NCBI GenBank assembly: GCA_024704765.1
Contig: JAKMXF010000011.1
Location: 479,557-543,556, forward strand
DNA from: Oopsacas minuta
Taxonomy: Eukaryota > Animalia > Porifera
Direction of reading: 5' to 3'
Length of the DNA: 64,000 bases
Part shown: positions 6,313 through 59,106 of the stretch, one piece after another
How the letters are laid out: every line of letters starts with the position of its first letter
How positions within the stretch are numbered: position 1 is the stretch's first letter
Program-made: the position numbers and the translations under genes
The notes under the pieces: model-generated
The model's input: only the letters and a program-made list of their open reading frames with translations
Told to the model about the DNA's origin: nothing
The model's database searches: none

Positions 6313-6601
6313 CTATTTTGAATGATTTTAAGAAATTGTCAAAATTAAGGATACAGATACAGGAAAATATGAAGTTAATAATTATACGGATACCATAGAA
6401 TATTAAAATAAAGGATTAGACTGTAGGCTACCATCTCCGGTCCTGGAACTTGGTTCCGTATGTGTTTTCTTGATATGTCCTGTCTATGGCCAATGGCATA
6501 ACATATTTACATTTGTTCCTATAAAAAAGGAGACAATTAGATTTTGACGTCTCGGTGGGTGGTATCATTTGGTGATATGACATTCATAGCAGTCAAAAGA
6601 C

Positions 6602-7061: not shown

Positions 7062-8171
7062 TAATCTTTAAAAAAGCTATCATTAGAAGAAGATATACTT
7101 TAGAAGTAATTTAATGTAGAAACAGTTAATAGACGGATACCAGGGTTCAATTATTCCATACAGATGTATTTGTGCTAGGCCTGACTCAGACAAGTTCAAG
7201 CCTTGGGACGAGTCGTACATTTGACAGATTATGACATAATACTTAGTCACTTTTTGAGGAATAAATATGAATTACTCGTAGAAACCTTGCTAATAGACGA
7301 ACTTCACTGGTAATTAGATGATATTTGACTATGTATCACCTCGTAATAAACCATCACATCTTAGAATTTAAAACTAACGATGAGTAAATAGAAATAAACC
7401 ACTGACAGTATTAAGTAGAGGAAATGATCAAATTGAATTTACATACAGTACGAGTGGCCTATATATTTTGATAATATAATTGAACTGTGACCCAAGAAAG
7501 GTCATGTATGTCCTTGGAACATGTTGAGTCGCTAAAATCAACATAAAAGGTCCAGCCGACAGACTGGTAGTGCTGCTCAGTGTTATGTGTTTTGTTCTTC
7601 TCAGGGGGGCACGCACCCCTGCACCTGACCACCCTGTGTAGATACCGCAATGCACCAAGACTGATTTTGGACTCCTGGATCTGAGAAATATTCCAGGATA
7701 TTCAATATTATTCGTCCCTGCTGAATTTAATGTTCTATTCTCAAATCCTATGGATAAAATTCTAAAGAATTATCCCACAATTATCCCCTGTCTAACTTTT
7801 GAAACTAATCTCTAGCATCAATTTGAAGTATATACAAAAAGGTGTGAAAATATGATCAATCATATGATTAATCACTCAGTGAGAGATTTGCAAATGTCAA
7901 ACTTCGTATTTTAGTTGCACTAAAATTACGAAGTGGCTATTGACACATACCTGTCAGTATCAATGGCCAATCTGTCGCTCTTATTAATACCGACCAGTGC
8001 TAATTTCTGGCCTTAGTACCAAACAGGCTGAGAGGTGTTGTCCAGATTCACTGGCACCGCCAAATTGTGCAATTGGGTATTTTGAAGCGAGCTACAGCTG
8101 TTAGATTTGATATTTTCGAATTACTGAGTACTTTGTTACCGGTTGGTGTCAAAAATGTAAATTGTCTCAAC

Positions 8172-8736
8172 CATAGCATTCTATACACTAAGGCAATGGT
8201 GCTGATTAATGGACTTGGACCAGGGATTGGGTAAGTCAGTTCTAAGGAAATAATTGAGATATATTAGTTGCGATAAAATTTAAACGGTACATTTTGGCCC
8301 GAATATATATATTATTGATGTTTGACATTACTCACAGTCTACATCTACAAACTATTTTCAGGCCAAAATGACGTCATCTGTTTGCTTAGTTAGCAAATAT
8401 GTCACAAAAATTCTCCTATTTTGAAACTACTTAAAGAGGAATTTAATACATTTACGGTTTCAAAATTTTACCATAGAATATACGGATGTGGCTGTACAAA
8501 ATATCAAATTTTTGTCATTATAAAGTTCCCGCGTTCCAGAGTTATAGTAGTGACCGTGGGTGGCATATTTGAGCCAATATTCATCCATAACTTGACATCC
8601 TTCAATGTTACGGCCAGACAAACCTACACACATATAGTATATACTCGACTTCCCATACCCTAATAATACATTATGGTGTGATATCTCTAAAGAATAATGC
8701 GCAGTCATCATTAATACCATATATAGTCATTTTCAA
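8172..8736 (+). repeat. Left terminal inverted repeat (L)
   Basis: Reverse complement of 8755-9275 (about 99% by eye) and of 30440-31339 minus the MITE (about 95% by eye). Confidence 0.95.
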
Positions 8737-8754
8737 GATTGCTTCATAATCATC

Positions 8755-9275
8755 AGAGATATCATATCAAAATGTATTATTAGGGTATGGGAAGTCGAGT
8801 ATATACTATATGTGTGTAGGTTTGTCTGGCCGTAACATTGAAGGATGTCAAGTTATGGATGAATATTGGCTCAAATATGCCACCCACGGTCACTACTATA
8901 ACTCTGGAACGCGGGAACTTTATAATGACAAAAATTTGATATTTTGTACAGCCACATCCGTATATTCTATGGTAAAATTTTGAAACCGTAAATGTACTAA
9001 ATTCCTCTTTAAGTAGTTTCAAAATAGGAGAATTTTTGTGACATATTTGCTAACTAAGCAAACAGATGACGTCATTTTGGCCTGAAAATAGTTTGTAGAT
9101 GTAGACTGTGAGTAATGTCAAATATCAATAATATATATATATATTCGGGCCAAAATGTACCGTTTAAATTTTATCGCAACTAATATATCTCAATTATTTC
9201 CTTAGAACTGACCTACCCAATCCCTGGTCCAAGTCCATTAATCAGCACCATTGCCTTAGTGTATAGAATGCTATG
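8755..9275 (-). repeat. Internal inverted copy of the TIR (R'), forming a 1.1-kb palindrome with L
   Basis: Ends in CTATG at 9275, followed by GGGGAAAC rather than the TSD. The shadow ORFs 8421-8663(+) and 8780-9022(-) differ by only one residue (N/S). Confidence 0.95.
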
Positions 9276-9628
9276 GGGGAAACGTATATTTCTAACATAC
9301 AAAAGTATGAAAATATTGTTGCACTTATTGTAATATATTTGATAGATTTTGTTCCGACAACTTTCAATGATTCACATTTTATCTTAGTTTAGTGATTTTA
9401 TACGTCTAATATGCCCCAAATTGACAAGTTTTACGTATTATACTTAATTAATTAAAACTGTATACGGTCAAAGCCTTTTGGGAGATTTTAGAGTCCGAAA
9501 AGGGCTGAAATTTGGTTGAATTTCGGGTTAAAAAGGTCGTTTTCTGATTGAGACAAGGTACCTCAGTCCTACCATCTACGGATAATATCTATTATATTTG
9601 TGCGAATTAAACAATGTAGCTATTTATC

Positions 9629-10000
9629 ATGGCTGAACCAAGCGATCAATCCCATGAATATTTTGCTGCTATAGCTTCACAAAATTATTTCCTCGATTTT
9701 AATTCATGCTCTCTGACTGGATACAATGAAATCGAACATCCAACTGAAATGATTCCATTCTGCTCAACTTTTTTACTTGTATTATATAACAAGAGAATTC
9801 AATGGGCATCACGATGGACCTGGCAACACCTCACGTTGGGTGCTCATTCCACACAACGTTCAGAATCCATTTACTCAACGATCAAACAGTTTATAAAAGG
9901 ACATTCTCTTCTTACACTTCTCTCAAAAAATCTCAAATTTACCAAATGTAATTTTAGTGGATTATTGAAATTATGCTATTCTATGAAATATGCATTTTAG
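9629..10000 (+). pseudogene. MULE/FAR1-like transposase remnant
   Basis: The motif WASRWTWQHLTLGAHSTQRSESIYSTIKQ resembles the conserved W...G..(S/T)TQRSES.NS..K segment downstream of the MULE DDE domain. No full transposase is present. Confidence 0.55.
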
Positions 10001-11105
10001 CAAAGAAAGAGAAAATTGAATTTTAATAATCTTGTTAAACATTTAAAATGTTAAGACCTTCAAGGCAGTCGGCGTAGACCTTTCGCCAGTCTGCTTCACA
10101 CATGGAATGTTTTACTCCGCAGTATCCCAGCTAGGTAGCTCTGCGAAGCTTAGCATCTTAGCTACCGATAACCGTACCAGAAACGTTGTCTACCCTGAAG
10201 CTTTACTCTTAGAATGTGTACTTAGAGTAGAGCTGTAAGATATAATATACACTATATCATATAATCAGTGCATAAATTAATGGAAGCCCTGAAATATATT
10301 TACCGTGTTTATATGTATAGATTTATAGTTAGAAAACAAATTTACTACAAATCTGTTAGCGCGTTATTACGCATGTACGTTTATACTCCTGGTGCTTCTA
10401 CTTCTGCATCTGACATCAGAAATTTATATTTATATATTTTCTCAACTTTTGGACAATAATTCTAAATAGTTCTAGAGATTAGCTTCCATCAGCTAACAAG
10501 AAGTAAAGAGACATAGAATTCTATTCTTACAACTAATATCTTCCCGCACAGGCGGGGATGAGAAACAAGCACATAGCACTGTTTGAATCTAACTCTTATA
10601 ATACACGTATAACGTATAATACGGTATACGTGATCTATTTGAACGTATTATACGTCTAGGTTAATCTCGAAATTAGAGATTTTTACAATTTTAGACTTGT
10701 TATCAAGTATTATATAATTTGGTTAACTTTGCTGAGATTTATCATTAACATTTTGAGAACTTCTGTTTTCATACAAATAAATATTGCAGAAATCAGTCCA
10801 GTAGAAGTTACGTCACCAAAAATTGTAGATTCAACGTATAATCCATATTATACGTAATACGTCTTTATTAAAAGAAGTATTAAACAACTCATTAACTTTA
10901 ATAGCACAATAATACTAAACAATTGCTTGTGAATAACGAACTTTAATCAACAAATATCAGAATTCCATAAAATTTAGCACGAATAACATCTACAATAATA
11001 ATAATGATCAAATAAATACTCCAAACATCGTAGTTTGTCATCATTAAAATAGAAAGACATAATCTAGTATGATTTAAGTGATATGTCAATAAGCCACAAA
11101 GCTAA

Positions 11106-12137
11106 TTAAAGAGGTTCTGATGGTAATTTTGTATGTAACACATGACTATCAGCTGCCTGTACAAAAGGCAATGGATTAGCACACAGCATTTCAGGTAAAT
11201 ATTGAAAAGCGGAGAAAGAATTTCGCTGTGGAGTAACACTATCAAATGAGAAATCAAGTGAACGCAATAGTTCCGCATCTTGAACTATAGTGAAAGGACC
11301 ATCAAATGTATATTGTGCTGTCATATGATTTCTACTAAGTCTGCACTCAATATTATTACTGTTTGAAATACGAATTAATAATAGAGGCAATGTGAGGAGA
11401 GATTTAGCACGATATAATGAATGCTTATTCCTAGAAGCAAGTTTATTATACATAAAAATTCTCTGCCTCATTTCACGTAGACTTTCAGTTTTCTCATGAA
11501 GCACCAACTCTTTATCCTCTATTGTAGATTTTATTAATTGCTTTAGCCCAGGACCGGAATTAGGTGTACGAACTTTGAATCCATCCCCTGCCCATGTAAG
11601 ATTACGTCCGTCTTTATTTATCAGTCCGATTGAAGTGAGAACATTAATACAATCATAGAGTCTACGTCTTACACTAGACTGTAGCATGGTCAGATTATGA
11701 TCTTTATTGCAGTATATTTCATTAAGAAGGCTCTCAGCTAAAGCACAATTGGTTAGAGTGTGTGCCATTTCAAGTTTGGAGCAGATGAGAGGAGTGAGAT
11801 CTTGTAGCCGAGCCTTGAAAATTGGAGTATTATTCATCTCATTAGGACAGCTACACAATATATTATGCTGTAGGTTATCTCTCTGATCGAAGAATCCCAT
11901 TAGAGTACTTGAAGGTTGTTGATATTGGATACCAGTTGGGGTCAATGGAATGGGAATAACTTGCTCTATTGTATTATCTTTCACAGAAGCTTGGTCAATG
12001 GTACAACCGAAATAAGGCAAAACTTCGTTCTTACAACTGCCCTCGTTTGGTTTAGAACGTTTGCTTATAGATTCATTATAGATATACTCATCTTCTTTGG
12101 AGAAGAAAGTCTCTTGCTTTGTACCGAGATTCTGCAT
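11106..12137 (-). CDS. Divergent transcription factor DP (TFDP)-like protein, intronless, 343 aa
   Basis: Winged-helix DNA-binding domain with DEF box VRRRLYDCINVLTSIGLINKDGRNLTWAG. It is followed by a coiled coil and a DP-type domain (LTLPLLLIRISNSNNIECRLSRNHMTAQYTFDGPFTIVQDAELLRSLDF, compare DP1 [49 protein letters not shown]). Confidence 0.85.
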   Translation of the reverse strand: MQNLGTKQETFFSKEDEYIYNESISKRSKPNEGSCKNEVLPYFGCTIDQASVKDNTIEQVIPIPLTPTGIQYQQPSSTLMGFFDQRDNLQHNILCSCPNEMNNTPIFKARLQDLTPLICSKLEMAHTLTNCALAESLLNEIYCNKDHNLTMLQSSVRRRLYDCINVLTSIGLINKDGRNLTWAGDGFKVRTPNSGPGLKQLIKSTIEDKELVLHEKTESLREMRQRIFMYNKLASRNKHSLYRAKSLLTLPLLLIRISNSNNIECRLSRNHMTAQYTFDGPFTIVQDAELLRSLDFSFDSVTPQRNSFSAFQYLPEMLCANPLPFVQAADSHVLHTKLPSEPL

Positions 12138-13094: not shown

Positions 13095-16000
13095 TCACAT
13101 ATTGCTTTTCTGTATATGTCTCCTTATAAAGAATGCCGCGATTATTGCAACGATTAAGATTACAACAATAATAAGCAGCAAGAATACGATTACTACAATC
13201 AAAACACTTTCTTGAGCAGCAAAGTCAAATGATGCACTTTGGAAGAATGTGGTGGGCACAGTGATTACCGGAAGTATTAGATAGTGGGAGACAACCTCAG
13301 AAAATGATTCTGGAGAATATGCGAACTGCATGTCCACACGAATTGTATAGTTGAAGTTGAGAGTTAATCCTTTAATGTTGAAGAATAGCTTCTCAGTGGT
13401 ACCAGCGAAATATTCAACATCTTCGTATCCATAGTATATTAAGAATTTCTCATCAGAGAGGGGCGTCTGCTCTGCTAACAAACCCCAGGTAACCAGGATG
13501 GAAGTGTCACTAGATGTCACAGCTGTTAGATCAGTTATTGCTTGTGAGTAGGTTGCTAGAGAGAATAGAAAAGAATTTAAGTTTTCCTGATTAAATAATT
13601 ATTTTAAAGATACTCACGAGAAAGAGAGAGTTGGATTTGAATAGCTAGCCTCTGTTCATTGTACCAATCTGTCACATAGAACATGTATACTCCTACATCT
13701 GACTCATCAAAGGATAAGAAAGTAATTGAATTGTCAGATACATGAGTGTCATCAGGTCTCTGCCACTTCCCAACAAGATCAACTGTCATAACTACATTCT
13801 TTGTCTGAACGATAATATAAGCTGTGTTGCCATCAGAAGTGAGTGACTCGAATGTTTGTACTGTCCCTGTATCCACGCTTATGACAGGTACTCCTGCGAA
13901 GTGTAAGGATATGGAATATCATTGCATGAATTGAATGAAAAGTGACTATTGTTTAATAATTGTACAGAACAAACCTTGCATAGATATTCCAGCACTCAGA
14001 ATGCTTTCGCTAGAAGTTTGATCTAGACATTCCATTAGATAGGTGTCTGTGTATTTGAACAGATTTCCTACTTCAAATACATTTAGTGGATTCTTAAAAA
14101 TGGAAAATGAGTCATTCTTCATCCAAACGAGTTCAGAAGATGAGATGGAGTTGTCAGGTGTGTGACAGAATAGAAATATATCATTATCTACTCCGAGGGT
14201 GTATTGGTATGATTCAGATGTCTCGATTACTAAAATGAAAATATTTAAATTTGGCAGAAACGGAATATCTTACATAAACTTTGTAAGAAAATTATCCGGT
14301 TTCTACTGTAGAAATACACAAAGCAATGAATCCAGAAATATGTAACCTTGTATGAGAGTTGTATCCAGAACAGTTACAGTGTATGTATTGCTGATACCGT
14401 CTGGTTGTTGTGTCACTTCACAGCTGTAGTAACCTGGATAGTTTATGTCCACTGACAAAACACTAGCTCCGTCAGCATCAATTGCACCAGTTCTACCAGC
14501 ACAAATACCAGCTAGATCTCTGTAACTCCAGGCAACTACTCCATTCAAACAGTAGAGATCTGTGTTTGCATTCAAAATAGAATTTGTTGATAATGGTCCA
14601 TATGTTGTTGGATCAATCTTCCCTCCAAATTGATTCACTAAATATGATAGTGAAGATTAGAATACTTGTTTGTCAATGTATTTCAATTAGAAGTTTAGAG
14701 GCAATACCTGTAAGATCTATCTGAATAGCAAGTGTATCCACATTATCCAAATTAGTGACATAGAACTTGTATACCCCCTGATCAAATAGTTGAAATGTGG
14801 AGAATGTCATTGAGCTTGTTGTGACCCAAGAGTAATCTGGTAGACGCCATCTCCCGGCTAGATTAACAGATAGAGCTACATTCCGTGAGAGTAGGTCAAG
14901 ATAAGCTTTATTGGTGTCTTCAGGGAGTAGAGGGTAGGATACCACAGATCCTGTGTTCAGTGTTATGACAGGTGGACCTGTTGATAGGATTAGAATAATT
15001 TCAATACTGATACATATAATGATATACTTAAATCTAATACACAAACCTTGAATGAGGATTTGTACATTGAATATTGGAGTATCATCCAAGGCATCTAGAC
15101 ATTCCATTGTATGGGTGTTTCCGTCGTCAGGAATGTCTGCAATGTTTAGAGGGTTCTGTTTCCTCTCACTGGTATCCATCTCTCTCCAACCGATCTCTCC
15201 AAAGGGAGCAGAGTTGTCAGGTTTGTGACAGAATAGGAAAGCAATATCTCTGTCTATCTTGACAGTGTAAGTTAATGAATGTGCAGCCTCAACGACTGAA
15301 GAATAGAAAATATGAGAATTGCAAATATGAAAGCTTTGCTATTTGAATTTGACTATACAACTATAGTGTAACCTCGTTAATAGTTAGCCCAAAAATGGTC
15401 AAAATTTGTTCGCATTATCCGGAGTTCGTATTAACCAAAGTAATACCAATTGACTAACTATTGTAGAGACCTGATTTGTGTAATTAATTGTTTGTCTTGT
15501 CCGGAAATTCGCATTCCACTGTATGTCTAAACATAACACATTAATGTTGCATACCTTTGTACACTTCTGTATCCATGACTGCAATTGAATACGTCTTACT
15601 GACACCATTTTCAGATACATAACAGCTGTAGTAGCCTACTTTGTCTGTAGTCACGAGTAACGAACTAAACCCAGTGAAGAAATCAGTTTCAGCTGATTGG
15701 GATGTGTTCACACCTTCTAGATCTTCATACTTCCAGATTACCTCAGGAATATCTATCACATCTGTTATGCAATATAGAGTAGTATTGGTAGTCAGCACTG
15801 AGAGATCTTCCAAATAGTTGTATTCTCTTAGAGCAATCTCTTCTCCAAATGGATACACTAGAATATCATAGCTACAAATCAAATGATTGAATGACATTAG
15901 TCCCCTATATAATATTCGATAGTTAACTATGGATAATAGATTTGATTTCGTATCTGATAAGAAATCTCCCCCTCCAACCCAGCTATGAGTGTCTCAAAAT

Positions 16001-19000
16001 GACCTTAAACAATATCCAAGCAGATAAACAAAATATATTACCCATGGCTAAATACTATCTAGTATATATGTGGACCATTTTCTTCAAAATAATCCCGTTA
16101 TACCTGTAAGCTGGATCTGAATAGCTAGTGTTTCTATGCTCTCCCAATTAATAACATAGAATTTGTATATTCCCTGATCTGATATCTCAAAAGCTGAGAA
16201 TGTTATGGAGTTATCTTCAACAAATGTTCCATTTGGTCTCTGCCATCTACCAGCTAGAACGGTAGCTAGAATTACATTCTTTGTAAGAAGATTAATACTA
16301 GCTGTGTTGTCACCAGGAGTTAGAGAAGAATAACTCTGAACCGTTCCTGTGTCCAGGGTGATTTCGGGAGGACCTTGTTTGAAAAGAAAAAATGAGCATA
16401 AGCATAGTGTATCTATTTAATCCCTAACGACAGAATAACCCAGATATATACTTCTACTCAGTATTCTAATGTTATTCTAATCAACAAACCTTGGAACAAT
16501 ATGTCAACAACGAGAATAGTATAAAGCGCGTCATTATTAAAGCATTCCAAAGTTTGCTTTCCATCAACAGTTGCACTTAATCCACCAACGTCAAAAAGAT
16601 CTCTAGTACCTACCTGGGTATTAAAGCTGTACCAATAATAGGAAAAGCGTAGAACACTGTTATCAGGTTTGTTACAAAGCAGAGATGTATCTATTCTGTC
16701 AATACCCTTTGTATAAGTGAAAGAATTCGTATCTTCAATTACTAAAGTATAATTCTCGTTAAAATGAAGTGCTCGGGACCACAATTTCATGTCGTTATAA
16801 GCGAGTAATTCAATAACTTTCAAGATATAGAGGGGAAAGAATCACTTCGTTATAACGAGAGTTACTATAGAGATATTAAAAATGGAATTCGCGATTCAAG
16901 TCACAATAAGCTCACCAGTAACAAGTGATGGATCCTGCAGACTGAATATATAGCTTCTGGTTGTCGCCATAAGCGTAACCTGACATTCATAGTATCCTGG
17001 TTCATTTGTTTGTACTGATAGTATACTAATTCCTGTGTCAGGATCAGTTGTAGGAGATTTGGTAATTATAGGTTGATTACTAGGGTAGTAGAACCAATAT
17101 ACCGGGTCTAAAGCTTGGTACTCTGTTATGCAGTAAATCATTGTAGTAGCAAGTAAGAGAGAGTTGTCTTCTAAGGCGATGTATGTATTTGAATCAATCT
17201 TCTCTCCAAATGGATAAACTAAATATTTATAGAAAATATCAACTTTTCCAAAATAATACAAACAAGTAGGTGAGGATCGGTGAAATCATAACATTTGTAT
17301 ATTGTCTATTTTGAAGAGGCACAATTCGCAATCTAAACCACGCGAATTGGCTTGTGACTCTAATTGCTAATGAAAATATACGTAGTATTGCAATCACATA
17401 CCTGTTAGTATTATCTGCATAGCTAGCGTTTCTTCATTATCCCAGTTCATTATATAGAACTTGTATAAACCTTGATGGGTTGTATCAAAAGTTTGGAATA
17501 TTATTGAATTGTCTCCCACAAATGTATCATCTGGTCTCTGCCATCTACCAGGAGTATCTACATGCATACCTACATTTTCTACCATTAGGTTAACAAATGC
17601 TCTGTTGATATCAGGAGATAGTAGCTCGTAATAGGACGTGGTTCTTTCATCCAGTATTATGACAGGTGGTCCTGTAGACAATAGTACATTTTAGCTAATT
17701 CAGTTAACATAAAGTCATTAGCATTCCATGAATATTTACAATATACTCTATTCATATTTTATGGGTAAATATATTTAGTGTTCGCTTATTTACGAATTGA
17801 AATTGGCATGAACCTCCTTAACTTGTGATCATAGGAAGTACAATAACACCAGCTAAAACCGCTCCGTTTTGCTCCACTGACGACAGGAGGGGTGTATTAC
17901 AGCCTATGGGAGGGTCCACAGGATGTGTTATAATAGGTATACGGGGGTTCACGGGTGAAAAGGTTGGGAACCATTGTATAAAAGCAATTGAATGGAACAA
18001 ACCTCTAATAAGGAGATCAAAATAGTGTAACGATTGTCCACCAGTGATAGAAGTACACTCAAATTGACGATTCATTCCAATATTGGGTAAATTGCTTATT
18101 TCTAATGGGTTAGTTACTTCTTCACTTGTGGTAAGATCTGTCATACCAGTCTCAGAAAAAGCTACCATACTATTGTAACAGAATAGGAAAATATTGTCTG
18201 CATCTACTCCAATGGTGTATGTATATATTTCTCCACCCGTTTCAGCTAGATAATTGTAATTCATAATTTATGTATTTAAGTTCGGAAATGTTGGACAGTT
18301 GGAAAGTATGAAAAACATAAACATAAACAAACTACACAGAATAAATTATGCAAACTATAATATCTACCTGTATATATTGATGTGTTAAGAATTGCTACAG
18401 TATAAGTATATCCGCCATCTTCATTCACTTCACAGTTGTAGTATCCAGGTTCATCTATGCCTACTGTTAACAAACTAATCCCAGTCTCCAGCTCAGTATC
18501 AGCTTCTAGATTACTAATTGTGCCATCTAGACTCACGTATCTCCATGTTACAAATGGATTGCTAGATCCATCTATGCAATATAGAGTTGTACTAGCTGTA
18601 ATGATAGAATTGTGTTCGATGCTTTCATAAATATTTGCAGATAATTGCTGTCCAAATCGATACACTAAAAATTCGTTGATCATTTATAGCATATTTAGAT
18701 TGCATTAGTTTACATATATTGATCATAAATAATACATACCTTTTAAGGTCAGGGAAGCAGCAAGGCGTTCAGTGTTCTCCACATCAGTGACCAGAAAAGA
18801 ATATACATATCCATCAGAAAGTTCAAATGTTGGGAATATAATAGAGCTACCATCTCCAACAAGTTCATCATCTTGGTTTGTCCATCTACCAACTAAATTA
18901 GAACTTAGGACTACATCTGTGGCTCTATAGTTAATGCTATATTCATTTTCTATTATAACATTAGTCTGAGTATCTCCAACATCAAGGGTTACTTCAGCTG

Positions 19001-22000: not shown

Positions 22001-25000
22001 GTACGTATAAGTATCTTCAGCAGAAATTACTATAGAAAACATAAGAAATGTTTTAGTGTTAGATAATCAGAATGTGGAGATTAGTAGAGTGCCAGAAATC
22101 TCAAGTGACGGTGATCAATTGAGAAGCACAGCCATGGCCTCAGACTGGATAGGAGAGGCTCAGGCCATTTGGCTATCTTCCCGAAAATGAGTACATATTA
22201 TCAAATATTTGTGATGATTATTCGATGAAATTTCAATTTTTGGAGGCCCCCTTAGAGCGTGAGGCCCAGGCCTAATGGCCCTACTGGACACCTCTCAGAG
22301 GACCTAAGTACAGGCATAAATACAACAACATACTTGTAGTGATAGATGGCTCCAGAAGTGCTGCAGTATACTTCTTCCGTTCTCCTCTGAACTGTGTAAT
22401 TTCACAGCTGTAGTATCCTGGATTATTTATATCGATATACAATGAACTAGCCCCAGTGGTAGCATTTGTTGGAACATCATAAGTACTCATTGTCCCATCT
22501 AGACCGACATAGCTCCAGATAACTCGTGGAGTACCTAACGGCTCTGTAATACAGTGTAGAGTACTTGAAGCTGTCAGAATTGCATTGTCATACAAAGCTG
22601 TGTATCTGTTAGCTTCGATAAGTTTACCAAATTGACTCACTAAAGAAAATATTATAATTATAAAATATACAAATCAGATAAGACGTATTATCCGAGTTCC
22701 GCTGAATTTATACAACATTACCTTCATTTGTGCAGAAGTAACAATTGTTTTGAATACTACAATCGATAGAAAACCAACCAAGGTCAAGTAAAGCAAAACA
22801 GTGATCCTGACTCCTACGAGATCTAACGCGTTCGTTGGTTTCAACACTTCTACGGCGAGCCCCTGGAAAGAAGTTAATATATGTAACGCGACTATCATCA
22901 ATCCAAGTAAATTGGTTTGCCTGATCCAAACCTATCCAACAAGAATTCACATCATTAGTAAATAGACTTAACAACAAGTTATTCTCTTTACTAGAAGATA
23001 TTGAAGCTAGATCTCCCCTATTTGCTTCACAACTTGATTGAGCATCATACCAATCTATTCCATCACCATTGTATGTATATGTGAAACAATCTCCGTCATC
23101 AGATATTACGTCACATCCAAGTAGCGGATCTACAAAATTATTTATTCAATAATCTACGAAATTTGCAAACTACAGAATTGCCCTGAATAAGCGCCGGAGT
23201 ATTCTACTGCACGATAAATCTAGAATTACAATCTCTGCCTACAGCATACAGGGCCGATAATACCCTGAGTGTCCTGTGTGTTTGGACACTTACTGCTACG
23301 AAAGACTTTCACATTACCTTCTATGACAATGGTTGTTTAGATACCCACTCTACATCCTCATGGACACCCATTGGCTCTAATAGGCAGCGCCGGCCATAGG
23401 ACATAGCACGTACCACTATTGAATTTATATTTTTAGTCGCACTAAAATTGGAGGTACTATAAGACAAAGATTTTACTCCAATAATCATAGTGCTTCCAAT
23501 TAATAGCGTCACTGTGAATACATTCAAACCCCATTTTCAAAATTTCATCCTCGTCTCTACATTAGAATTTTGTTAGAGTCCTTCTTCCCTTCGCATGATT
23601 ATTATTCAAAATAACTTTGTCATTACCTGCATATGTGATTGGAGCAAGTATTACAGAAAATGATTTGGGTCCATCGTTAGGATTCACATTACAAATGTAT
23701 GATCCTGGATTCGTTATGCTTAAAGTCAAAGCACTTACTCCCTTGCTGGAACCTGTTCTACCTGGTATTGTTGTAGCAATACCGTCCACATCAATATACA
23801 CCCATTCAAACAAATTTACGTCCTTAGTACTTGATACACAGTGAATGGTTTGACTCTGTGTCAGTATAGCGTTGTATGGTAATGCTTCAATATGAATTGT
23901 ACCGACATCATGTCCAAATGGATCCTCTAAACAATTACAATAAGTTAAAGAGAAGTTTACCGTATTTACTATAATCTCTAATGAGTTTACAGTAATTGAA
24001 TGCATCATAGAAAATTTTGTGGATTTGGAACTACAATAACGTAATAGAGATTTGATTAACTACAAAAAATAGCTTTGTATAGGCTAAACTGGGTGGGTAT
24101 TAAAATGGTATTTCAATATTTTGTGATTTTTCTCAACTTTATATGTCTTCTAGATTTTCGTAAGTAAAATAACAAATTTAGCTAAAACAGAGCTCTTTAC
24201 AATTTCCTGATTTTGTTAGATCTAATTACATCATAGATCAACAATTCTTACATGTGTTCATGACTACTAGCTATTTCAGATAGAAACTTTAGCAATTTTC
24301 CAATTTTGAGAGTTGAATAATATAAAATTGTGACCTGATAGAGCATAATAGAATTCAGATTCGGAATCAGCATAATGGAGGGTACATAATGCAATTTATA
24401 GTTTCAAAGAAGCAAAATTTTGTATATTGACAATGAAATTTAGTAAAAATTACCTAAATATATTCCTGTCTCCAATAATGCTACCGTATATGTCCTAAGG
24501 ATCCCATAATCTTGAGTAACATCACAGCTGTAGAACCCTGGTGCATCCAACTCAATATCCAACTTGCTAATACCAACATTATCAGTCGTGGTTGAAGCGA
24601 TAGATCCCTTAGAACCAAACAGGTTATCCAAATCCAAATAATACCAGCTGACTTGTTGCCCTAGCTCTGTAACACAAAATAGTTCTGAATCTGAGGTTAG
24701 GATTGAATTATCTTCCAAACTTTCGTACGAGTTTCTTGAACGCCCAAAAGGAGTTACTAAAATTAGCAAGCAAAATGTATTGTAAATGTTTTACTTAAAA
24801 CATTAAACAATCCCTATAACAAATATACTGTAGAAGAGCCTATGAGGCTATGACTGTGCTTATATTTTGAAATTTTGTTATCAAACTTTACCTGGAGAAC
24901 TGCAGAAGAAACATTGCCTATAATCACAACAATCTACATCATACCAATAAGAGTCTGGAGTTATTTGTGCACAGTCCTCATCTCCAGTGGCTTCATCTGG

Positions 25001-27663
25001 TTGACCGTAACCCCAATTTGTGTACGTTACTGCACTTCCCTTGTCCCATTCATATTCATTTTCATTTTCTATGTCATTAAATCCTATCCAGCAATTTGTG
25101 TGTGTTTGATCATCTGCAATGCTGTACATAACAGCATTCTCAAGGCTGGAATATATTGAGGCTATTGTCTGGTCATCTGCATAGCATAAACGTTTAGCAT
25201 TTTCCCAATCGACCGCCGTACTTACTTGCACATAGTTAAAACACTTTCCAGTGCTAGATATTGCATCACATCCTTTCAAATCAGGAATTAGAGTGTTTGG
25301 AGCTACAAAGAATAATCAAATAATATCTGTATTGAAATATCAAATGTTCTATGACGTAATAATTACCTATGTAAATGCATATAAAATGTAAAATCCGTGG
25401 CTATGGGAATTCACATGGGAATGGAAATCATTTCTGGCTATGGGAATTTCCATGTATTCTCTGTACTAAGCCAAGTGCATTCTATTTGAGATGAATAAAT
25501 TCATTTATCAGGGTTACCATCGGGATGGGAATTAAAATTCCGTACCCACGGCAGCCCTGCGTATATTTCATAGTTTATCTGCTCACAAGAATTTTTGTAT
25601 TATAAACTTTTTACCCAAAATATTATTCTTTCTAAATATTAATGTAATATATACCTTTTTGTATGCAGAAGAAGCAAACATACTCCCAAGTGCAAAGACG
25701 ATCATACCAAAATCCGTTATTTCTAATTGTCGTACAGTCATGATTTGTATTGCTGGGCTCAGTACTATGCCAATTGGTATATTCACTAGGATTTCCATCT
25801 ACCCAGGTATAAGCGGTAGCACCGATATTGTTATATCCTATCCAACATCTATAAACAGCAGAACTGACGAAGTCAGTAAACTTTGTATTCTCTGCAACTG
25901 AAGATATGGAGGCTAGATCTCCCCCATTTGCTTCACAAATTGATTGAGCATTCGCCCAATTTATTCCCTGATCTTCAAACACATAGGTTACACATCTTCC
26001 ATCATCAGAGATTATGTCACAGTCACTTCCTGATACTACAAAATAAAACAAAATTTAATTAGTAATAATTGTGCTGAACTCATATTTATTCAAACTGTAC
26101 ATGTAACTTTATCCATATTACCCAATTCCCGAGCATTCGTTGATTCATTCTGGTTTAAGTAGACAAATTTAAGGACTTTTCTTACCAGCAACCTAGGTTA
26201 CTACATAGAAATATTACAGCTACCTAGGTGCTAGATGCCCTTCAGCAAATATCTAGTGACGTGAATCATGGGTTGCTGGTTAGATAAATCCTTAATGAAG
26301 TAATCAGAATTATTCGAATAATTCAAATTATACTAAAATATTCAGTTTTTAGGGAATTAAGAATTTTGGAAAATATTTTGTACAAAGAATCTAAATAGGT
26401 TTTCATTTTCATAAAATTTGATTAATAGGATGAGAAAATTGGTAATTTTAGAAAGCAGGGGCCAATGGTAAGCTTTTAAACTGGTGTGTCTGCACCTGTT
26501 TGCGCGTAGTAGTAACTGCTATTTGGTTGGCACCGACCTCAGAATACGAATAATATTTGTGAATATAATTATATTTATTTCCTAATTCCCATTTTTCAAT
26601 GAATAAGTCAACTTAGGTCAGTGGTTCCAACCTTTTCTGTTAGTGGACCCCATATGCCAATATAAACGCATCCTGTTGACCCATCCATAGACTGCAATAG
26701 ATCCTGAGGTCCCCCTCTTTGTCGTTCGTGGACCCCTGGTTAGGAACCGATGAGTTAGGTAGTATAACTATTGTGTTTCTAAGATCCACATACGATTTGG
26801 ATATTCTGAAAACGTGTTATAGATACTTTGCAATAATATTGATCTTATCTGATCAATTTCAAATTCACAATAGAAATTTTCATCCAATTATTCAGATCAG
26901 GCGACTATTCGAGCAAATACTTATGCATTGTAATCAACTTACATAGTGTATCACATTCAATATAGACATGTTCATCATCACCACAGTGACCTGTATCAAA
27001 GCTAGAGTAGGCTCTGTATGAACATTCAAGTATATTGGTCTCACTACCAGGACACCCTAAGTTAACAATTCTGTAATTTGTATCCGAGTCATACCGAGCT
27101 AATTCAACAAATACTGCCCAGCGATATCCTAATATACGACATATCACATCTCCATTATACTCACTCCAGCTATCGTCACAGATAGGTCCCCAGGCTCCTT
27201 CAAAATAGGCTTCTACGATACCATAGAATCCACTTGTCAGTCTTATGTCTCCTTCATCTGTAGTATAATTTGAAATAATTTTAAATTTTACAATGTGACA
27301 TGTAAATAGTGTCGGATTATTCAGGCGAATTTGCATTATAGGAAGATGATATAATACACTGTACAGTTAACTCCCTTTATATCGAAGCTCAAGAGACCGC
27401 GATAATTGCTTCAATATCCACGGAGTTCGATCTAACTGATGAAATATGTTACTTTGACGCTTTGGGACAATATTGGTACAATTTCATACTTCGATTTAAC
27501 GGGAGATAACTGTTTGTAATAATTTTATTAGAATAACAAAACAATCTATATATGCGAAGCCAGTTAATTATTTATTAAAACATATACCTGCCTCACAAGA
27601 AGATCCAGAGATTCGCTGAATAACCAAAATTAGAAACAAAAATATCAAAATACACACTTTCAT
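13095..27663 (-). CDS. 26-exon single-pass receptor: signal peptide-SRCR-CTLD-CTLD-IgA-IgA-CTLD-(IgA-B-C)x6-FN3-TM-short tail, about 2,521 aa
   Basis: Exons read by hand, all bounded by AG/GT and all phase 1: 27663-27588 (signal peptide MKVCILIFLFLILVIQRISG), 27257-26943 (SRCR, AWGPICDDSW), 26035-25655, 25302-24892 (CTLD), 24756-24454, 23926-23627, 23129-22722 (CTLD), 22639-22334, 22029-21790, 21274-21008, 20539-20234, 19917-19669, 19003-18740, 18664-18368, 18245-18003, 17671-17402, 17218-16916, 16741-16490, 16373-16104, 15857-15555, 15295-15047, 14977-14708, 14637-14347, 14229-13975, 13893-13618, 13555-13095 (FN3 + TM). Internal exon lengths are all multiples of 3 and I found no stops. The total of 7,566 nt is divisible by 3. 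Confidence 0.85.
19150..19430 (+). repeat. Intronic relative of the Helitron-like repeat at 29680-30114
   Basis: Shared TTTGTCCGTTG..AAGGAA and ATGCTGAATCCGA.T..CAC blocks. Confidence 0.5.
26619..26752. mobile_element. hAT (Charlie-like) MITE in a receptor intron
   Basis: TIRs CAGTGGTTCCAACC / GGTTAGGAACCGATG. Flanks ACTTAGGT / AGTTAGGT match at 7 of 8 bases. Confidence 0.7.
27364..27512. mobile_element. pogo/Tigger-like MITE in a receptor intron
   Basis: TA|CAGTTAACTCCCTTTATATCGAAG ... CTTCGATTTAACGGGAGATAACTG. Confidence 0.65.
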
Positions 27664-29224
27664 TTTAAAACAATAATATTACATTTATGAATATGAATGT
27701 AGAGTTATGAATTTGTGTAAATAAGAATTTGATTTATTATATATCTACAGATGTGTCAGGTTACACTGACTCATGAAATACTTTTCAAATATGATGAATT
27801 CTGGATCATCATTGCCATACACGACACATTTGCATTTATTCATTATCACAACTGATAGAGAGTAAGTGTGTCTACATATACAGATGTTTAAGAATTGGAT
27901 GAATAAGTTCAGCTATATTAAGTTCAATTATAATACATTGCTAAATGCATCAATCAGACAATTAAGGTATCTTTGGATAAATATTGCTGTTTGCCACATT
28001 TGTAATTCCAGACGTCAGGAGGCAAATTTAGTCATTGTAGAAGGAATATTTTATGATTGTTTTATGATCTGTAGCATATTCTGAGCCAGAATACATCGAG
28101 AGGGCCAAATGGGCAAAAATGAGGTTTTGGGTGGAGCTGCATTAGTGCGAATTTGGAGTGTTGGCATTAGTTTTACTCAATTTTTGGAGAATAGACTTTA
28201 AAATATAATCCACTACAATATAGAGAAGTTATTCTCGGAGCCTAAGGTCTTGATAGCAAAATCCTAAGACTCTAGTGGTCCAACATTTTTCTGAGGCCCC
28301 TGGCGTCCCAGCTCCAAATTTTGTCCCAGGATCCGATAGTTACAAATGCAAATTGAATTGTATATTTCTACAAAAAATCACCGTGAATAAGGGCAGACAG
28401 TTGAAAGTGAATAATTAATCCAATAAAGAGTCCTATCACGTTCCCGTTTCTAAAATCCCTTATTCTATCATTATCTCCTTTATTCCCATAAATATCTCCT
28501 TTTTAATGCCATTTCATATTTTTCTAACACTGAATACTTCCTTAAATTTCTAAAAAACCTACACAATCATTTTAAACCCAAAAATCCAACCATCATCTAT
28601 ATAGGTGTGAAATAGTACAAAATAGTACAGTAAATGTAAGTCTAAATGTAGGGTCCTAAAGCGAAATTACACTCTAGGACCCTATGGTCTTAAGAATGAT
28701 GCAGGACACTAGGGTCCTATATATAATTTCCCTACTATATATATGTCCAATCTATTAGAGAAAACAAGAATAAGTAAATATTTAGGCCAGAGTCACTATT
28801 TGGATAGCAGTGATGGATTTTATAGCATTATCGTTGGATCTGGCCCTGAAAATTCGCTGGAAGTTTTTGGCATACCTATGTGTTACCAATCTTTAGAGTT
28901 ATCTTTCTCTAAGTATTGCCCTTCCAATGCGGATACCATTTTAAGACAACATTTTTGACGATCTTCTCTCTCTATTATTTTTGTATAGTGTAGATATATA
29001 TTGGGGAATTATTATATATGTTTTTCATTCTCAAGGGTACCAAAAGTAAGAAATTTCTATTTTAGTTATGTCGATCTTTTAATTAACTACATGGTCGAAA
29101 ATATTTCTAAATTCAATTCTACACATCACCCTTATCCAATTTATTGGCTTTATTGCTTACATGATCTAAATTGCCTCTAATAGTAGTTATAATCTGTTTG
29201 ATTCCACTCGACATTTAGTTTATT

Positions 29225-29670
29225 TTGTTCATTTTATTGTTTTTGGCTTCTCTAGTTTGTAAAAATTCTCCTGAAAAGTTTTGTTATATTTGTGGGAGGT
29301 ATACTACAGCTGACCAACGACAAAATATCACAAAGGCTGTAGAACGCTGTTATTTCGCTTATTTTGGATGCCATCTTGGGGATCAAGATAAGCCGTGGGC
29401 TCCACACAATGCCTGAAAGACGCTTGTGGTATGCTGGGAAGAGAAATATAATCCCGTTTGCGGTTCCAATGATATGGAGAGAATCAATGTGTCTTCTTTC
29501 GGATTGTTATTTCTGTATGACGAAAATTGATGGTATCACAAAAAAGAATAAATCCACTATTGCGTATCCAGACGTACCGTCCGCCATTAGGCCAGTTCCA
29601 CATTCAGAGGACCTATCTGTACCAGTTCCATTGGAAATATTGGACATTTGCAGTGACAATGATAGTAGTG
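29225..29670 (+). pseudogene. N-terminal remnant of a Chapaev3-like transposase
   Basis: CKNSPEKFCYICG...YFGCHLGDQDKPWAPH, then a frameshift into PFAVPMIWRE...DCYFC...YPDVPSAIRPVPHS. Homologous to the 32556-33000 transposase. Truncated by a downstream repeat. Confidence 0.75.
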
Positions 29671-29679
29671 GAGATACTA

Positions 29680-30114
29680 TCATTGTCGCTGCTATCTGTT
29701 TGTCTGTTTGTCTGTCTGTCCGTTTGTCCGTTGCTAAGGAAGCTGAAATGGAATGTGGAATTCGTATTTGCAAAAATGTTTGTATCTATATATCTATGGT
29801 GTTAATCAGGAAAATATACAAATTTCATAAATTTGACTAAAGGTTAGCGAATATGCTGAATCCGAATCACACTTATGGATTTGTCATATACAAATTAAAG
29901 TTGTTTATATGAATATAAAGTAAACAAAAAGTAAACAAAAAGTAAACAAATTTCAAAATTATCCTAGAAACGTGGTTTCAACGGTTATTGTGGGGTAATC
30001 GGGTACGCTGATTCCGAATATCACACAAACGAATAGTCCTAAGCGAGGGCCGAAGGTCGAGTACGGACACGAAGTGTTAGAATCCGCGTAGCGCAAGGAA
30101 GTATAGTGCACTAG
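29680..30114 (+). mobile_element. Non-autonomous Helitron-like element
   Basis: A|TC start, a (TCTG/TTTG)n microsatellite near the 5' end, and a GC-rich 3' region ending CTAG|T at 30111-30115. Confidence 0.5.
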
Positions 30115-30439
30115 TGATAGTTAATATTAGTATGATTTAGTGGGTAATAAACATAAATGTATGTTTAATTTCATATATTAAATCGCATATTGGTGCAATC
30201 TTCCAACCAGAAAATTACAAATTCTAGACCTGTTGTGAATACATACTTAACTCATTCATAAACAATCCCTTCAAATTCTTCAATTTCAGGTATTTTTATG
30301 TAATCATCAAAAACTTTTTACAATTTTGTATATCAGTGTAATCAAACATATTGTCTTAAGTCATTAATAATCTTCTTTGTAAATAATTGCACATTTATTA
30401 TAATTTTATAGAGAAGTAGAATAAATTATAAGTTAAGTG

Positions 30440-31339
30440 TTGAAAATGACCATATATGGTATTAATGATGACTGCGCATTATTCTTTAGAGATATCACAC
30501 TATAATGTATTATTAGGGTATGGGAAGTCGAGTATATACTATATGTGTGTAAGTAGGTTTGGCCGTAACATTGAAGGATGTCAAGTTATGAATGAATATT
30601 GGCTCAAATATGCCACCCACGGTCACTACTATAACTCTGGAACGCGGGAACTTTATATTGACAAAAATTTGATATTTTGTACAGCAATATCCGTATATTC
30701 CATGGTAAAATTTTGAAACACCGTAAATATATTAACTTCCTCTCTACGTAGTTTCAAAAGAGGAGCATTTTTGTGACATATTTGCTAACTAAGCAAACAG
30801 ATGACGTCATTTTGGCCTCAAAATAGTTTGTAGATGTAGACTGTGAGTAATGTCAAATATCAATAATATATATATTCGGGCCAAAGTGTACCGTTTAAAT
30901 TTTATCGCAACTAATATATCTCAATTATTTCCTTAGAACTGACTTACCCAATCCCTGGTCCAAGTCCATTAATCAGCACCATTGCCTTAGTGCAGGGTTT
31001 CTTAACCGGGGGTCCATACCGTCGAGCAGAAAAGGAGTTTCATGTACTTTGCAAACTTTGCATTCTTTTATATAAGAAATATTTTTTCTCGCAATTATCA
31101 TAACATACTAATTCTGAATCATACAAATTTTACTAATATACTAAATATCTAGTAATTCATAAGACCATAGTTTTCTTCAGATTTATCATGCGAGCGAATA
31201 AGAAAATTGTGCCAACTTAACGCATTATTTAGTTTGTACAGTTTCTGGACAGGGGTCCATAGCTTTCACTAGATCTTCATAGGGGGTCCTTCACTTCAAA
31301 AAGGTTAAGAACCCCTGCCTTAGTGTATAGAATGCTATG
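30440..31339 (-). repeat. Right terminal inverted repeat (R) interrupted by a hAT MITE
   Basis: Reverse complement of 8172-8736 once 30993-31325 is removed (567 bp versus 565 bp). Confidence 0.95.
30993..31317. mobile_element. hAT MITE (325 bp) with perfect 8-bp TSD
   Basis: TIRs CAGGGTTTCTTAACC / GGTTAAGAACCCCTG. TSD CCTTAGTG at 30985-30992 and 31318-31325. The empty site is visible in R' at 9254-9261. Confidence 0.95.
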
Positions 31340-31489
31340 TCTCAACTAATAATTTAAGCTATATAAATGAAGGAATCATGATCTTAGTGTATAAGTGTAG
31401 GTTGTGAATCAGATGCTATCAATTTTGAATCACTGTAGGATTTCAGTTAAAGTTATACGAGTATCATACCACATGATTATTCTAACAGC

Positions 31490-58927: not shown

Positions 58928-59106
58928 TTTCGGATCTGATATTATGGAAGCTAATTGTATTGGTACACACAATTTATGCAAATCAGCTAAATTCTTACAG
59001 AATATATACTAACATCATTAAAGCAACTAGACGCATGTTTTAGTACGGGTAGATGACGTCATGCCCACCCACCCTATACACTTTGTATTACGGTGAAGCA
59101 AATCTA

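What the first reader, a model, noticed from the sequence alone, without database searches (positions are those of the whole stretch)
8165..31346. 23-kb P-like giant transposon or composite carrying an intact receptor gene and a cell-cycle transcription factor
Seen in sequence: TCTCAAC|CATAG at 8165-8176 and CTATG|TCTCAAC at 31335-31346, joined to about 565-bp inverted repeats. The exact 7-bp match at both outer junctions is unlikely by chance. Established knowledge: P-superfamily elements have CANRG termini and 7-8 bp TSDs. Inference: the whole 23,168-bp block was inserted as one unit, or is now a mobilisable unit. Its cargo is a complete 26-exon SRCR/CTLD/Ig receptor plus a DP-like gene, with no P transposase of its own. 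That would be a Pack-type, gene-carrying giant P element in an animal, able to move multi-exon surface-receptor genes.
Basis: partly seen in the sequence, partly recalled or inferred. Interest (0 to 1): 0.9.

Follow-up and report, generated by a model that had tools for sequence, protein, structure and literature searches.

The report
Gene block moved by foldback transposons
In the glass sponge Oopsacas minuta, a 23-kb stretch carrying two intact genes sits between two copies of a small P/Galileo-like "foldback" transposon with a matching 7-bp duplication outside them, at a spot where three related sponges have nothing, so the block was probably moved as one piece by the transposon copies.

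Summary
TCTCAAC|CATAG lies at 8165-8176 and CTATG|TCTCAAC at 31335-31346, next to inverted arms of about 550 bp that are 96% alike.

- **Left "TIR":** it is a complete 1,104-bp foldback element (8172-9275). Its arms are 99.4% alike and it has no target-site duplication (TSD) of its own.
- **Right "TIR":** it is a fractured copy (30440-31339), one arm plus 17 bp of the centre, with a nested 325-bp MITE.
- **Family:** a related sponge carries a THAP-ORF element with the same CATAGC terminus, a shared TGGACCAGGGAT motif and a clean 7-bp TSD. This fits a P/Galileo-like family.
- **Synteny:** in three other hexactinellid assemblies the Mind-bomb-like and UBX-LRR orthologues are direct neighbours, 1.3-4.4 kb apart. 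Their DP-like orthologue lies elsewhere, next to ODAD3.

The block is therefore most likely a lineage-specific insertion bounded by the transposon ends. It resembles a composite or macrotransposon, as with maize Ac/fAc or Drosophila foldback-flanked TEs, rather than a single Pack-type giant element.

I could not exclude recombinational insertion into a resident copy, or a mis-join through the repeat; no contig spans either copy. The scan's other notes on this genome describe the same transposon type, but none I found describes this block.

The parts
8165..8171 (.). Left copy of the 7-bp direct repeat TCTCAAC (putative target-site duplication)
   Evidence: Read directly. The junction with the element is covered by unique-depth contigs spanning 7839-8196 in four runs, which carry both alleles of a SNP at 8059.
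8172..9275 (+). Copy 1: a complete 1,104-bp foldback (Galileo-like, non-autonomous) element. It has CATAG...CTATG termini, arms of about 500 bp that are 99.4% alike, and an asymmetric centre of about 100 bp. Its own flanks do not match (TCTCAAC / GGGGAAA).
   Evidence: Contig depth shows it is multi-copy in the genome.
9276..11105 (.). [quoted passage not shown] It is largely repetitive DNA.
   Evidence: Contig depth is 10-100 times the unique level over 9311-10100. The 123-aa ORF there has no Pfam hit.
11106..12137 (-). DP-like transcription-factor gene: a single exon of 343 aa with E2F_TDP and DP domains.
   Evidence: Pfam hits and the annotated gene. Orthologues of 63-70% identity in other hexactinellids lie next to ODAD3, not here.
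13095..27663 (-). Multi-exon SRCR / C-type-lectin receptor-like gene with an annotated product of 2,521 aa.
   Evidence: Gene calls. SRCR and Lectin_C hits on exon ORFs.
27664..30439 (.). Region upstream of the receptor gene, up to the truncated edge of copy 2. It contains an annotated 143-aa low-complexity ORF (29409-29840, plus strand) with no known domain.
30440..31339 (-). Copy 2: a fractured copy of the same element. It is one arm plus 17 bp of the centre, inverted relative to copy 1 and 96.4% like copy 1's left arm. Its terminus CTATG is at 31335-31339.
30993..31317 (.). Nested 325-bp MITE with CAGGG...CCCTG termini and an 8-bp TSD (CCTTAGTG), inserted 14 bp inside the terminus of copy 2.
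31340..31346 (.). Right copy of the 7-bp direct repeat TCTCAAC.
   Evidence: Read directly.
3937..7061 (-). Flanking gene: UBX-LRR (848 aa). Its start lies 1.1 kb from the left junction.
36078..38150 (-). Flanking gene: Mind-bomb-like (690 aa). Its stop lies 4.7 kb from the right junction. It is the direct upstream neighbour of UBX-LRR in three related assemblies.

Best explanation
The 23,168-bp stretch 8172-31339 is a composite, macrotransposon-like unit in Oopsacas minuta. Two separate copies of a non-autonomous P/Galileo-like foldback element lay on either side of about 21 kb of host DNA holding the receptor gene and the DP-like gene. One copy is complete (8172-9275). The other is now only a terminal fragment (30440-31339). 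A transposase supplied in trans used the two outward-facing CATAG termini as if they were the ends of one element. It cut the whole unit out and pasted it into the spacer between the Mind-bomb-like and UBX-LRR genes, producing the 7-bp duplication TCTCAAC.

Shown here: the termini, the 7-bp repeat, the lack of a TSD around copy 1, the 7-bp TSD of a related THAP element, the adjacency of the flanking genes in relatives, and the different home of DP in relatives.

Inferred: that a transposase did the moving, that both genes moved in one step, and when copy 2 was truncated and hit by the MITE.
For: 1. A 7/7 direct repeat abuts the outward-facing termini of two inverted copies. The chance of such a match is about 1.3e-4.
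2. Copy 1 is complete and its arms are 99.4% alike, yet its own flanks do not match (TCTCAAC vs GGGGAAA). This is expected if its original left flank stayed behind when the composite moved.
3. The family makes 7-bp TSDs. In a related sponge, L007 7674-9959 is a 2,286-bp element with a THAP-domain ORF, CATAGC termini and the TSD GTTTGAT. It shares CATAGC.T.C..TATA and a 12-nt TGGACCAGGGAT block at the same depth in the TIR. Galileo, in the P superfamily, has TIRs of about 600 bp, a middle segment and 7-bp TSDs (PMC2775673).
4. There is an orthologous 'empty site'. In L007, L009 and L013 the Mib-like orthologue (66-68% identity) lies 1.3-4.4 kb upstream of the UBX-LRR orthologue (61-63%) in the same orientation, with nothing from the block between them. 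Removing the block leaves a 5.8-kb spacer in O. minuta.
5. DP is out of its ancestral place. In four assemblies, including Vazella pourtalesii, the DP orthologue directly follows ODAD3/CCDC151. In the three non-Vazella ones it also precedes an Fe-ADH gene. None of these neighbours is in the window.
6. DP is single-copy in the O. minuta records (one contig), as cut-and-paste predicts.
7. The mechanism has precedent: maize Ac/fAc macrotransposons of 10-28 kb (PMC9910405), and the foldback-flanked Ising TE and a 100-kb P element in Drosophila (PMC6431247).
Against: - No contig or read seen here spans either repeat copy, so the order flank-copy-cargo rests on the published assembly alone.
- No empty allele, donor site or second copy of the unit was found. 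The O. minuta ODAD3 or Fe-ADH locus could not be retrieved.
- In relatives the receptor is not within 10 kb of DP. So at least one earlier event must have brought the two genes together.
- The three 'empty-site' assemblies form the sister clade to O. minuta plus its closer relatives. In two closer relatives, Mib is not within 10 kb of UBX. The polarity for Mib-UBX therefore rests on linkage being shared, not on a nested outgroup.
- TCTCAAC fits the GTnnnAC-like target reported for Galileo, and by unchecked scan notes, only in its last two bases.
- I did not examine an autonomous P-type transposase with these exact termini in O. minuta. Only unchecked scan notes report one.
Confidence: 0.45

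Rival explanations
1. Recombinational insertion into a resident element. A single foldback copy had inserted between Mib and UBX and made the TCTCAAC duplication. The 21-kb segment, itself flanked by copies of the same family elsewhere, then entered that resident copy by homologous recombination. This could be integration of an excised circle, or double-strand-break or gap repair templated by the ectopic copies. The result is x-[hybrid copy]-cargo-[hybrid copy]-x without any composite transposition.
For: It gives exactly the observed geometry: matching outer 7-mers, unrelated inner flanks, and copy 1 without its own TSD. The family is multi-copy, so templates exist. Galileo copies are documented to recombine ectopically (PMC2775673). 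The palindrome centre, where copy 2 ends, is a plausible breakage point. The synteny data fit equally well.
Against: It needs three family copies and more steps. Gap repair would be duplicative, yet DP is found on one contig only. No mosaic pattern is evident: the arms of copy 1 are 99.4% alike while copy 2 differs by 3.6%, with the differences spread along the arm.
Confidence: 0.2
2. Assembly artefact. The true genome has one foldback copy with a normal TSD between Mib and UBX. The assembler's path switched inside the collapsed repeat into a repeat-bounded 21-kb segment from elsewhere, and switched back.
For: Both boundaries of the block are copies of one multi-copy repeat, which is the classic place for mis-joins. 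In four runs the Logan contigs break inside the element and none spans it. The assembly is a hybrid SPAdes/SSPACE/Pilon build (PMC10280926). This reading would also explain the missing TSD of copy 1 and the 'empty site' in relatives.
Against: - Two coordinated mis-joins are needed.
- The repeats are only 0.9-1.1 kb, well below PacBio read lengths. That rests on my general knowledge; I did not see the reads.
- The window contains no N.
- The copies are distinguishable: 3.6% divergence, a MITE in copy 2 and an asymmetric centre.
- DP has lost its ancestral neighbours inside the segment in any case.
Confidence: 0.12
3. Two independent insertions and a coincidence. The receptor and DP genes reached this spacer by an unrelated rearrangement. 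The two foldback copies inserted separately, and the identical 7-mers are due to chance or to a target preference.
For: DNA transposons make up about 15% of this genome and the family has many copies, so two copies 22 kb apart is ordinary. Microsynteny in hexactinellids is loose; for example, the genes downstream of UBX differ between O. minuta and relatives. Galileo-type elements have a target consensus. One loose-end entry hints that other copies may be preceded by TCAAC (place 8167, two contigs).
Against: Chance of a 7/7 match is about 1.3e-4. TCTCAAC is not a close fit to the reported consensus. Copy 1's missing TSD would need a separate explanation. The repeat ends bracket exactly the material that relatives lack between Mib and UBX.
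Confidence: 0.08
4. One reading: one giant Pack-type P element whose own 565-bp TIRs enclose captured genes.
For: The outermost arms are inverted, end in CATAG and are flanked by the 7-bp repeat.
Against: The left 'TIR' is a self-contained element with both termini and a centre. The right one is a fragment of a different, 3.6% diverged copy in the opposite orientation. Pack-type elements carry gene fragments inside a single element, not two whole genes between two elements.
Confidence: 0.03

Closest known systems
Maize Ac/fAc macrotransposons (alternative transposition; Huang & Dooner 2008, Wang et al. 2022, as cited in PMC9910405)
   Same: A full element and a fractured terminal fragment with outward-facing termini bracket 10-28 kb of host DNA. 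The whole unit excises and reinserts with a normal-length TSD. Size and architecture match the present case.
   Different: The superfamily differs (hAT, 8-bp TSD). In maize the movement was observed genetically; here it is only inferred from one fixed structure in an animal genome.
Ising's composite TE of Drosophila melanogaster, flanked by foldback (FB) elements
   Same: Large host segments with intact genes are mobilised between two foldback-type transposons (PMC6431247).
   Different: FB elements are a different family. Those units are hundreds of kb and were seen in laboratory stocks. The mechanism there, and whether a clean TSD is produced, was not checked here.
Galileo (subfamily Newton) of Drosophila buzzatii, P superfamily
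   Same: A non-autonomous element of about 1.5 kb with TIRs of about 600 bp, an orientable middle segment and 7-bp TSDs. It has a THAP-type transposase partner and is known for restructuring chromosomes (PMC2775673; PMC3688188 listed).
   Different: Galileo's documented rearrangements are inversions by ectopic recombination, with exchanged, inverted TSDs. Here the 7-mers are direct and lie at the outer ends, which an inversion does not give. There is no sequence similarity to Drosophila Galileo, and the host is a sponge.
Bacterial composite transposons (two IS copies framing cargo)
   Same: Two copies of a small element mobilise what lies between them by use of the outer ends (PMC6431247).
   Different: Those are prokaryotic IS families with cargo of a few genes without introns. 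The comparison is an analogy only.
Pack-MULE / Pack-type elements
   Same: A non-autonomous DNA transposon that carries host sequence.
   Different: Pack elements are single elements that hold captured gene fragments between their own TIRs. Here two separate element copies enclose two complete genes.

Membership tests
P superfamily (P / 1360 / Galileo) DNA transposon - for the foldback copies | Termini of the CANRG type on both ends | tested here: met
   CATAG at 8172 and CTATG at 9271-9275 and 31335-31339. The same terminus is on the THAP element in L007.
P superfamily (P / 1360 / Galileo) DNA transposon - for the foldback copies | 7-8 bp target-site duplication on insertion | tested here: inconclusive
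   The related THAP element in L007 has a clean 7-bp TSD, GTTTGAT. In the window, copy 1 alone has no TSD, and only the outer ends of the pair share 7 bp. No other O. minuta copy could be read.
P superfamily (P / 1360 / Galileo) DNA transposon - for the foldback copies | Mobilised by a transposase with an N-terminal THAP domain and a P-type RNase-H-like catalytic core | tested here: inconclusive
   A 172-aa THAP-domain ORF (E 2e-12) lies inside the L007 element, which shares the terminal motifs. No catalytic domain was seen there, and there is no transposase in the window's block. O. minuta THAP elements are reported only in unchecked scan notes.
Galileo-like foldback structure | Very long TIRs (hundreds of bp) making up most of a short non-autonomous element, with a short middle segment | tested here: met
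   Arms of about 500 bp at 99.4% identity around an asymmetric centre of about 100 bp, in a 1,104-bp element.
Composite / macrotransposon | Two separate element copies (or a copy and a fragment) with outward-facing functional termini enclosing host DNA | tested here: met
   A complete copy at 8172-9275 and a fractured inverted copy at 30440-31339, with genes in between.
Composite / macrotransposon | TSD of the family's length flanking the outer termini only | tested here: met
   TCTCAAC at 8165-8171 and 31340-31346. The inner flanks are unrelated.
Composite / macrotransposon | Empty target site, or excision or reinsertion of the whole unit, observed | tested here: inconclusive
   Only at the level of orthologous gene order: Mib and UBX are adjacent in three related assemblies. 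Those relatives are too diverged (61-68% aa identity) for a base-level empty site. No allele, donor site or second copy was found.
Pack-type (gene-fragment-capturing) element | A single element whose own TIRs enclose captured host gene fragments | tested here: not met
   There are two distinct copies, the left one with its own internal right terminus. The cargo is two whole genes.

The most novel reading that the evidence does not exclude
Glass sponges harbour an active, or recently active, P/Galileo-like foldback system that relocates whole multi-exon host genes as composite units. This locus would be a fixed natural macrotransposition in a non-bilaterian animal, with the target duplication still intact and the ancestral gene adjacency preserved in related species. 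If it recurs, it would be a concrete mechanism for gene-order scrambling in these compact genomes.
Probability: 0.4. Interest if true: 0.7.

Novelty: new member of a known kind. Interest (0 to 1): 0.55.

Why it matters
Macrotransposition, in which host genes move between two transposon copies, is well shown in maize crosses and Drosophila stocks. Fixed natural examples with both an intact TSD and an ancestral empty arrangement are, to my knowledge, rare in animal genomes. If long reads confirm this one, it documents relocation of a 2,521-aa surface-receptor gene and a DP-like transcription-factor gene by a P/Galileo-like element in a sponge. It would also give a testable mechanism for the poor microsynteny among hexactinellids. 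If long reads refute it, the locus is a useful warning that foldback repeats can fake nested insertions in hybrid assemblies.

Tried and rejected
**Searches that led nowhere**
- **Other copies via the element's ORF:** the 86-aa ORF found no protein at all, so other copies could not be fetched that way.
- **Reads:** Read laying on 7400-10100 confirmed the left junction and the multi-copy nature of the element. The Logan contigs break inside the repeat, so there is no spanning evidence, no usable flanks of other copies and no empty allele.
- **Donor site in O. minuta:** the neighbours of DP in relatives are a WD40 gene, ODAD3/CCDC151 and Fe-ADH. None is in the window. The 90% clusters hold no O. 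minuta member. The representative search with Vazella ODAD3 gave only exon fragments and distant orthologues of 30-37% identity. The test is left open.
- **Similar DNA elsewhere:** blastn of the foldback and of the nested MITE against all fetched relatives' loci found nothing.
- **Scan notes:** a look-up by sequence returned nothing. The operators had said a blank there means nothing.

**Models considered and rejected**
- **Inversion by ectopic recombination, or hybrid-element insertion, as for Galileo:** these predict inverted, exchanged 7-mers (x ... x'). Here the 7-mers are direct at the outer ends.
- **Fold-back replication of a single arm:** the flank after 9275 (GGGGAAAC) matches the reverse complement of the left flank in only 5 of 8 positions.
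- **A smaller TIR pair around DP alone:** none was found.
- **A compositional difference between the block and its flanks:** none was found.
- **NHL-like ORF downstream of DP in Vazella:** it is only 24% identical to the window's NHL ORF. I treated it as a paralogue, not as synteny.

Full report
**Source.** The DP-like and Mind-bomb-like proteins of the window are encoded on GenBank contig JAKMXF010000011.1 of assembly GCA_024704765.1. That accession prefix belongs to the genome paper of the glass sponge Oopsacas minuta. The paper reports 34% interspersed repeats, of which 15.4% are DNA transposons. It also describes a hybrid PacBio/Illumina assembly and an isolated cave population expected to have low heterozygosity.

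**The observation.** The strings are as reported. TCTCAAC|CATAGCATTC lies at 8165 onwards and GAATGCTATG|TCTCAAC ends at 31346. The repeat finder and blastn show 8186-8736 to be the reverse complement of 30440-30992 at 96%. The 7-mers are direct and the arms are inverted, so the geometry is that of a target-site duplication and not of a duplicated flank. Two random 7-mers of this window are identical with probability 1.3e-4.

- The left repeat is not a bare TIR. Positions 8172-9275 form a complete 1,104-bp near-palindrome: CATAG...CTATG termini, arms of about 500 bp and a centre of about 100 bp that is not palindromic, which gives the element an orientation.
- Its two arms differ by 3 substitutions and one 4-bp indel in 500 bp (99.4%). 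Either arm is only about 96.3% like the right-hand copy.
- Its own flanks, TCTCAAC and GGGGAAA, do not match.
- The right-hand copy (30440-31339) is one arm plus 17 bp of the centre. Its inner end matches the left arm and centre of copy 1, so it lies in inverted orientation, and it stops abruptly near the palindrome centre.
- A 325-bp MITE with CAGGG termini and an 8-bp TSD (CCTTAGTG) sits 14 bp inside its terminus.
- No other fragment of the family is in the window.

**Content of the block.**
- The annotated genes are the single-exon DP-like gene (11106-12137, minus strand; E2F_TDP and DP domains) and a gene with a 2,521-aa SRCR/C-type-lectin product (13095-27663, minus strand). There is also one small ORF without a domain.
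- None of the 61 ORFs of 65 aa or more in the block matches a transposase family.
- No gene crosses either boundary.
- Base composition is uniform across the boundaries.
- No alternative inverted-repeat pair brackets DP alone.

**Family of the repeat.** A related sponge assembly supplied a test. L007 7674-9959 is a 2,286-bp element carrying a 172-aa THAP-domain ORF (E 2e-12). It has TIRs of 66 nt or more, CATAGC termini and a perfect 7-bp TSD, GTTTGAT. It lies 41 bp upstream of the called ATG of the UBX-LRR orthologue. Its TIR shares the terminal CATAGC.T.C..TATA with the O. minuta foldback. It also shares a 12-nt block, TGGACCAGGGAT, at the same depth of about 45 nt. Long TIRs, a short middle segment, a 7-bp TSD and a THAP partner describe Galileo of the P superfamily, whose Newton subfamily is about 1.5 kb with TIRs of about 600 bp (PMC2775673). 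Other first-stage notes on this genome report Galileo-like elements with CATA(G)/CATRG ends and 7-bp TSDs. I used those notes only as leads. A P-type catalytic domain was not seen here, so membership is probable but not complete.

**Reads.** Logan contigs of four runs from one sample were laid on 7400-10100.
- Unique-depth contigs of 350-370 bp span the left junction (7839-8196) in all four runs. They carry both alleles of a SNP at 8059.
- Depth over the element, and over 7491-7945 and 9311-10100, is 10 to several hundred times the unique level, so these stretches are repeats.
- No contig spans the element.
- One contig joins the end of one copy to the start of another through 33 unrelated bases. 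This shows that further copies with the same termini exist elsewhere in the genome.
- Two contigs align from 8167, that is, including TCAAC before CATAG. This might hint at a target bias, but it is too thin to weigh.

Orthologues of the UBX-LRR protein (61-65% identity) were found in six ENA sponge-metagenome assemblies.
- In three assemblies (L007, L009, L013) a Mib-like orthologue (66-68% identical over its full length) lies directly upstream in the same orientation. The gaps are 4.4 kb (2.1 kb without the THAP element), 1.3 kb and 1.6 kb. No receptor exon or DP sequence lies between them.
- In O. minuta the same two genes, in the same order and orientation, are 29.0 kb apart. Removing the block and one 7-mer leaves 5.8 kb.
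- The DP-like orthologues (63-70% identity) sit elsewhere. In four assemblies the gene directly follows a five-exon coiled-coil gene identified as ODAD3/CCDC151. That identification comes from a Vazella pourtalesii transcript that is 100% identical to locus L011, and from the names given to distant orthologues.
- In the three non-Vazella assemblies the DP orthologue also precedes an Fe-ADH gene. None of these neighbours occurs in the window.
- In one relative the DP locus and the Mib-UBX locus lie 138 kb apart on the same contig.
- By DP identity, Vazella is closer to O. minuta than the other assemblies are (70% vs 63-65%; tree). ODAD3-DP adjacency is therefore shared across the deepest split sampled, and the position of DP in O. 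minuta is derived.

**Caveats on the synteny.**
- The three 'empty-site' assemblies form the sister clade of O. minuta plus P0009/P0010/P0013 in the UBX tree (support 92/97, rooted with very distant hemichordate sequences).
- In two closer relatives (L008, L010) no Mib-like gene lies within 10 kb of UBX. The Vazella contig is too short to tell.
- The receptor is not near DP in any relative. The two cargo genes must therefore have come together before, or apart from, the event inferred here.

**Explanations.** Any model must give matching direct 7-mers at the outer termini, unrelated inner flanks and a complete copy without its own TSD.
- Ectopic-recombination inversions and hybrid-element insertions, documented for Galileo, give inverted, exchanged 7-mers. 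They are excluded.
- Composite transposition (confidence 0.45) gives the structure in one step. The outer termini of a full copy and a fractured copy act together, as in maize Ac/fAc macrotransposons of 10-28 kb and the foldback-flanked Ising TE. A 100-kb P element has been shown to transpose.
- Homologous insertion of the repeat-flanked segment into a resident copy (0.20), by circle integration or by break repair, gives the same structure. It needs more copies and steps. In its duplicative form it predicts a second DP copy, which was not found.
- An in-silico equivalent (0.12), where the assembly path switches twice inside the collapsed repeat, also gives the same structure. The short contigs available cannot exclude it.
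- Pure coincidence (0.08) is disfavoured by the 1.3e-4 match probability, by copy 1's missing TSD and by the fit between the repeat ends and the lineage-specific material.

**Verdict.** It is wrong in anatomy: this is a composite of two copies, not one giant or Pack-type element. Its present mobility is doubtful. It is a new member of a known kind, and long-read confirmation is the decisive missing step.

Noticed in passing
L007:7674-9959: In a related hexactinellid assembly (ERZ25072740), a 2,286-bp element with a 172-aa THAP-domain ORF, CATAGC termini and a perfect 7-bp TSD (GTTTGAT) lies 41 bp upstream of the called ATG of the UBX-LRR orthologue. That is the same intergenic spacer that holds the block in O. 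minuta. The region upstream of this gene may be a preferred target.
   Followed up: partly
window:30993-31317: A 325-bp MITE with CAGGGTTTCTTAACC / GGTTAAGAACCCCTG termini and an 8-bp TSD (CCTTAGTG), nested in copy 2. It looks hAT- or P-like, and no other copy is in the window.
   Followed up: partly
window:7491-7945: A very high-copy repeat just upstream of the UBX-LRR gene. Contig word depth reaches about 45,000 against 50-70 for unique sequence, with many internal deletion joints among copies.
   Followed up: no
window:8755-8810: A sub-segment of about 50 bp of the foldback arm has far more copies than the rest. About 20 contigs per run enter and leave it with other flanks, so part of the arm is shared with another, more abundant repeat.
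   Followed up: no
window:58070-58976 and 63094-64000: A 907-nt inverted repeat, 99% complementary, 4.1 kb apart and running to the window's end. It overlaps the DM13-DOMON gene (56531-58981). Another note of the scan already covers it.
   Followed up: no
window:6674-6777 and 34910-35013: A 104-nt direct repeat (92%) lies on both sides of the block, outside it. One copy is in the 5' part of the UBX-LRR gene region, the other in the spacer next to Mib. It is probably a fragment of another repeat family.
   Followed up: no
window:51600-52367; 53139-54991: A Tc1/mariner-type DDE_3 transposase remnant (255-aa ORF) lies next to exons of an XPD/Rad3-like helicase (Helicase_C_2, HBB domains).
   Followed up: no
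L003-L006, L011: In other hexactinellids the DP-like gene directly follows ODAD3/CCDC151, an outer dynein arm docking subunit. No O. minuta orthologue of ODAD3 turned up in the 90% clusters or among the representatives. I could not decide whether O. minuta lacks it.
   Followed up: partly
window:39482-39657: A tandem array of a 16-bp unit (TAGTGAAGTGTCCATA), at least 8 overlapping register copies, upstream of the Mib-like gene.
   Followed up: no
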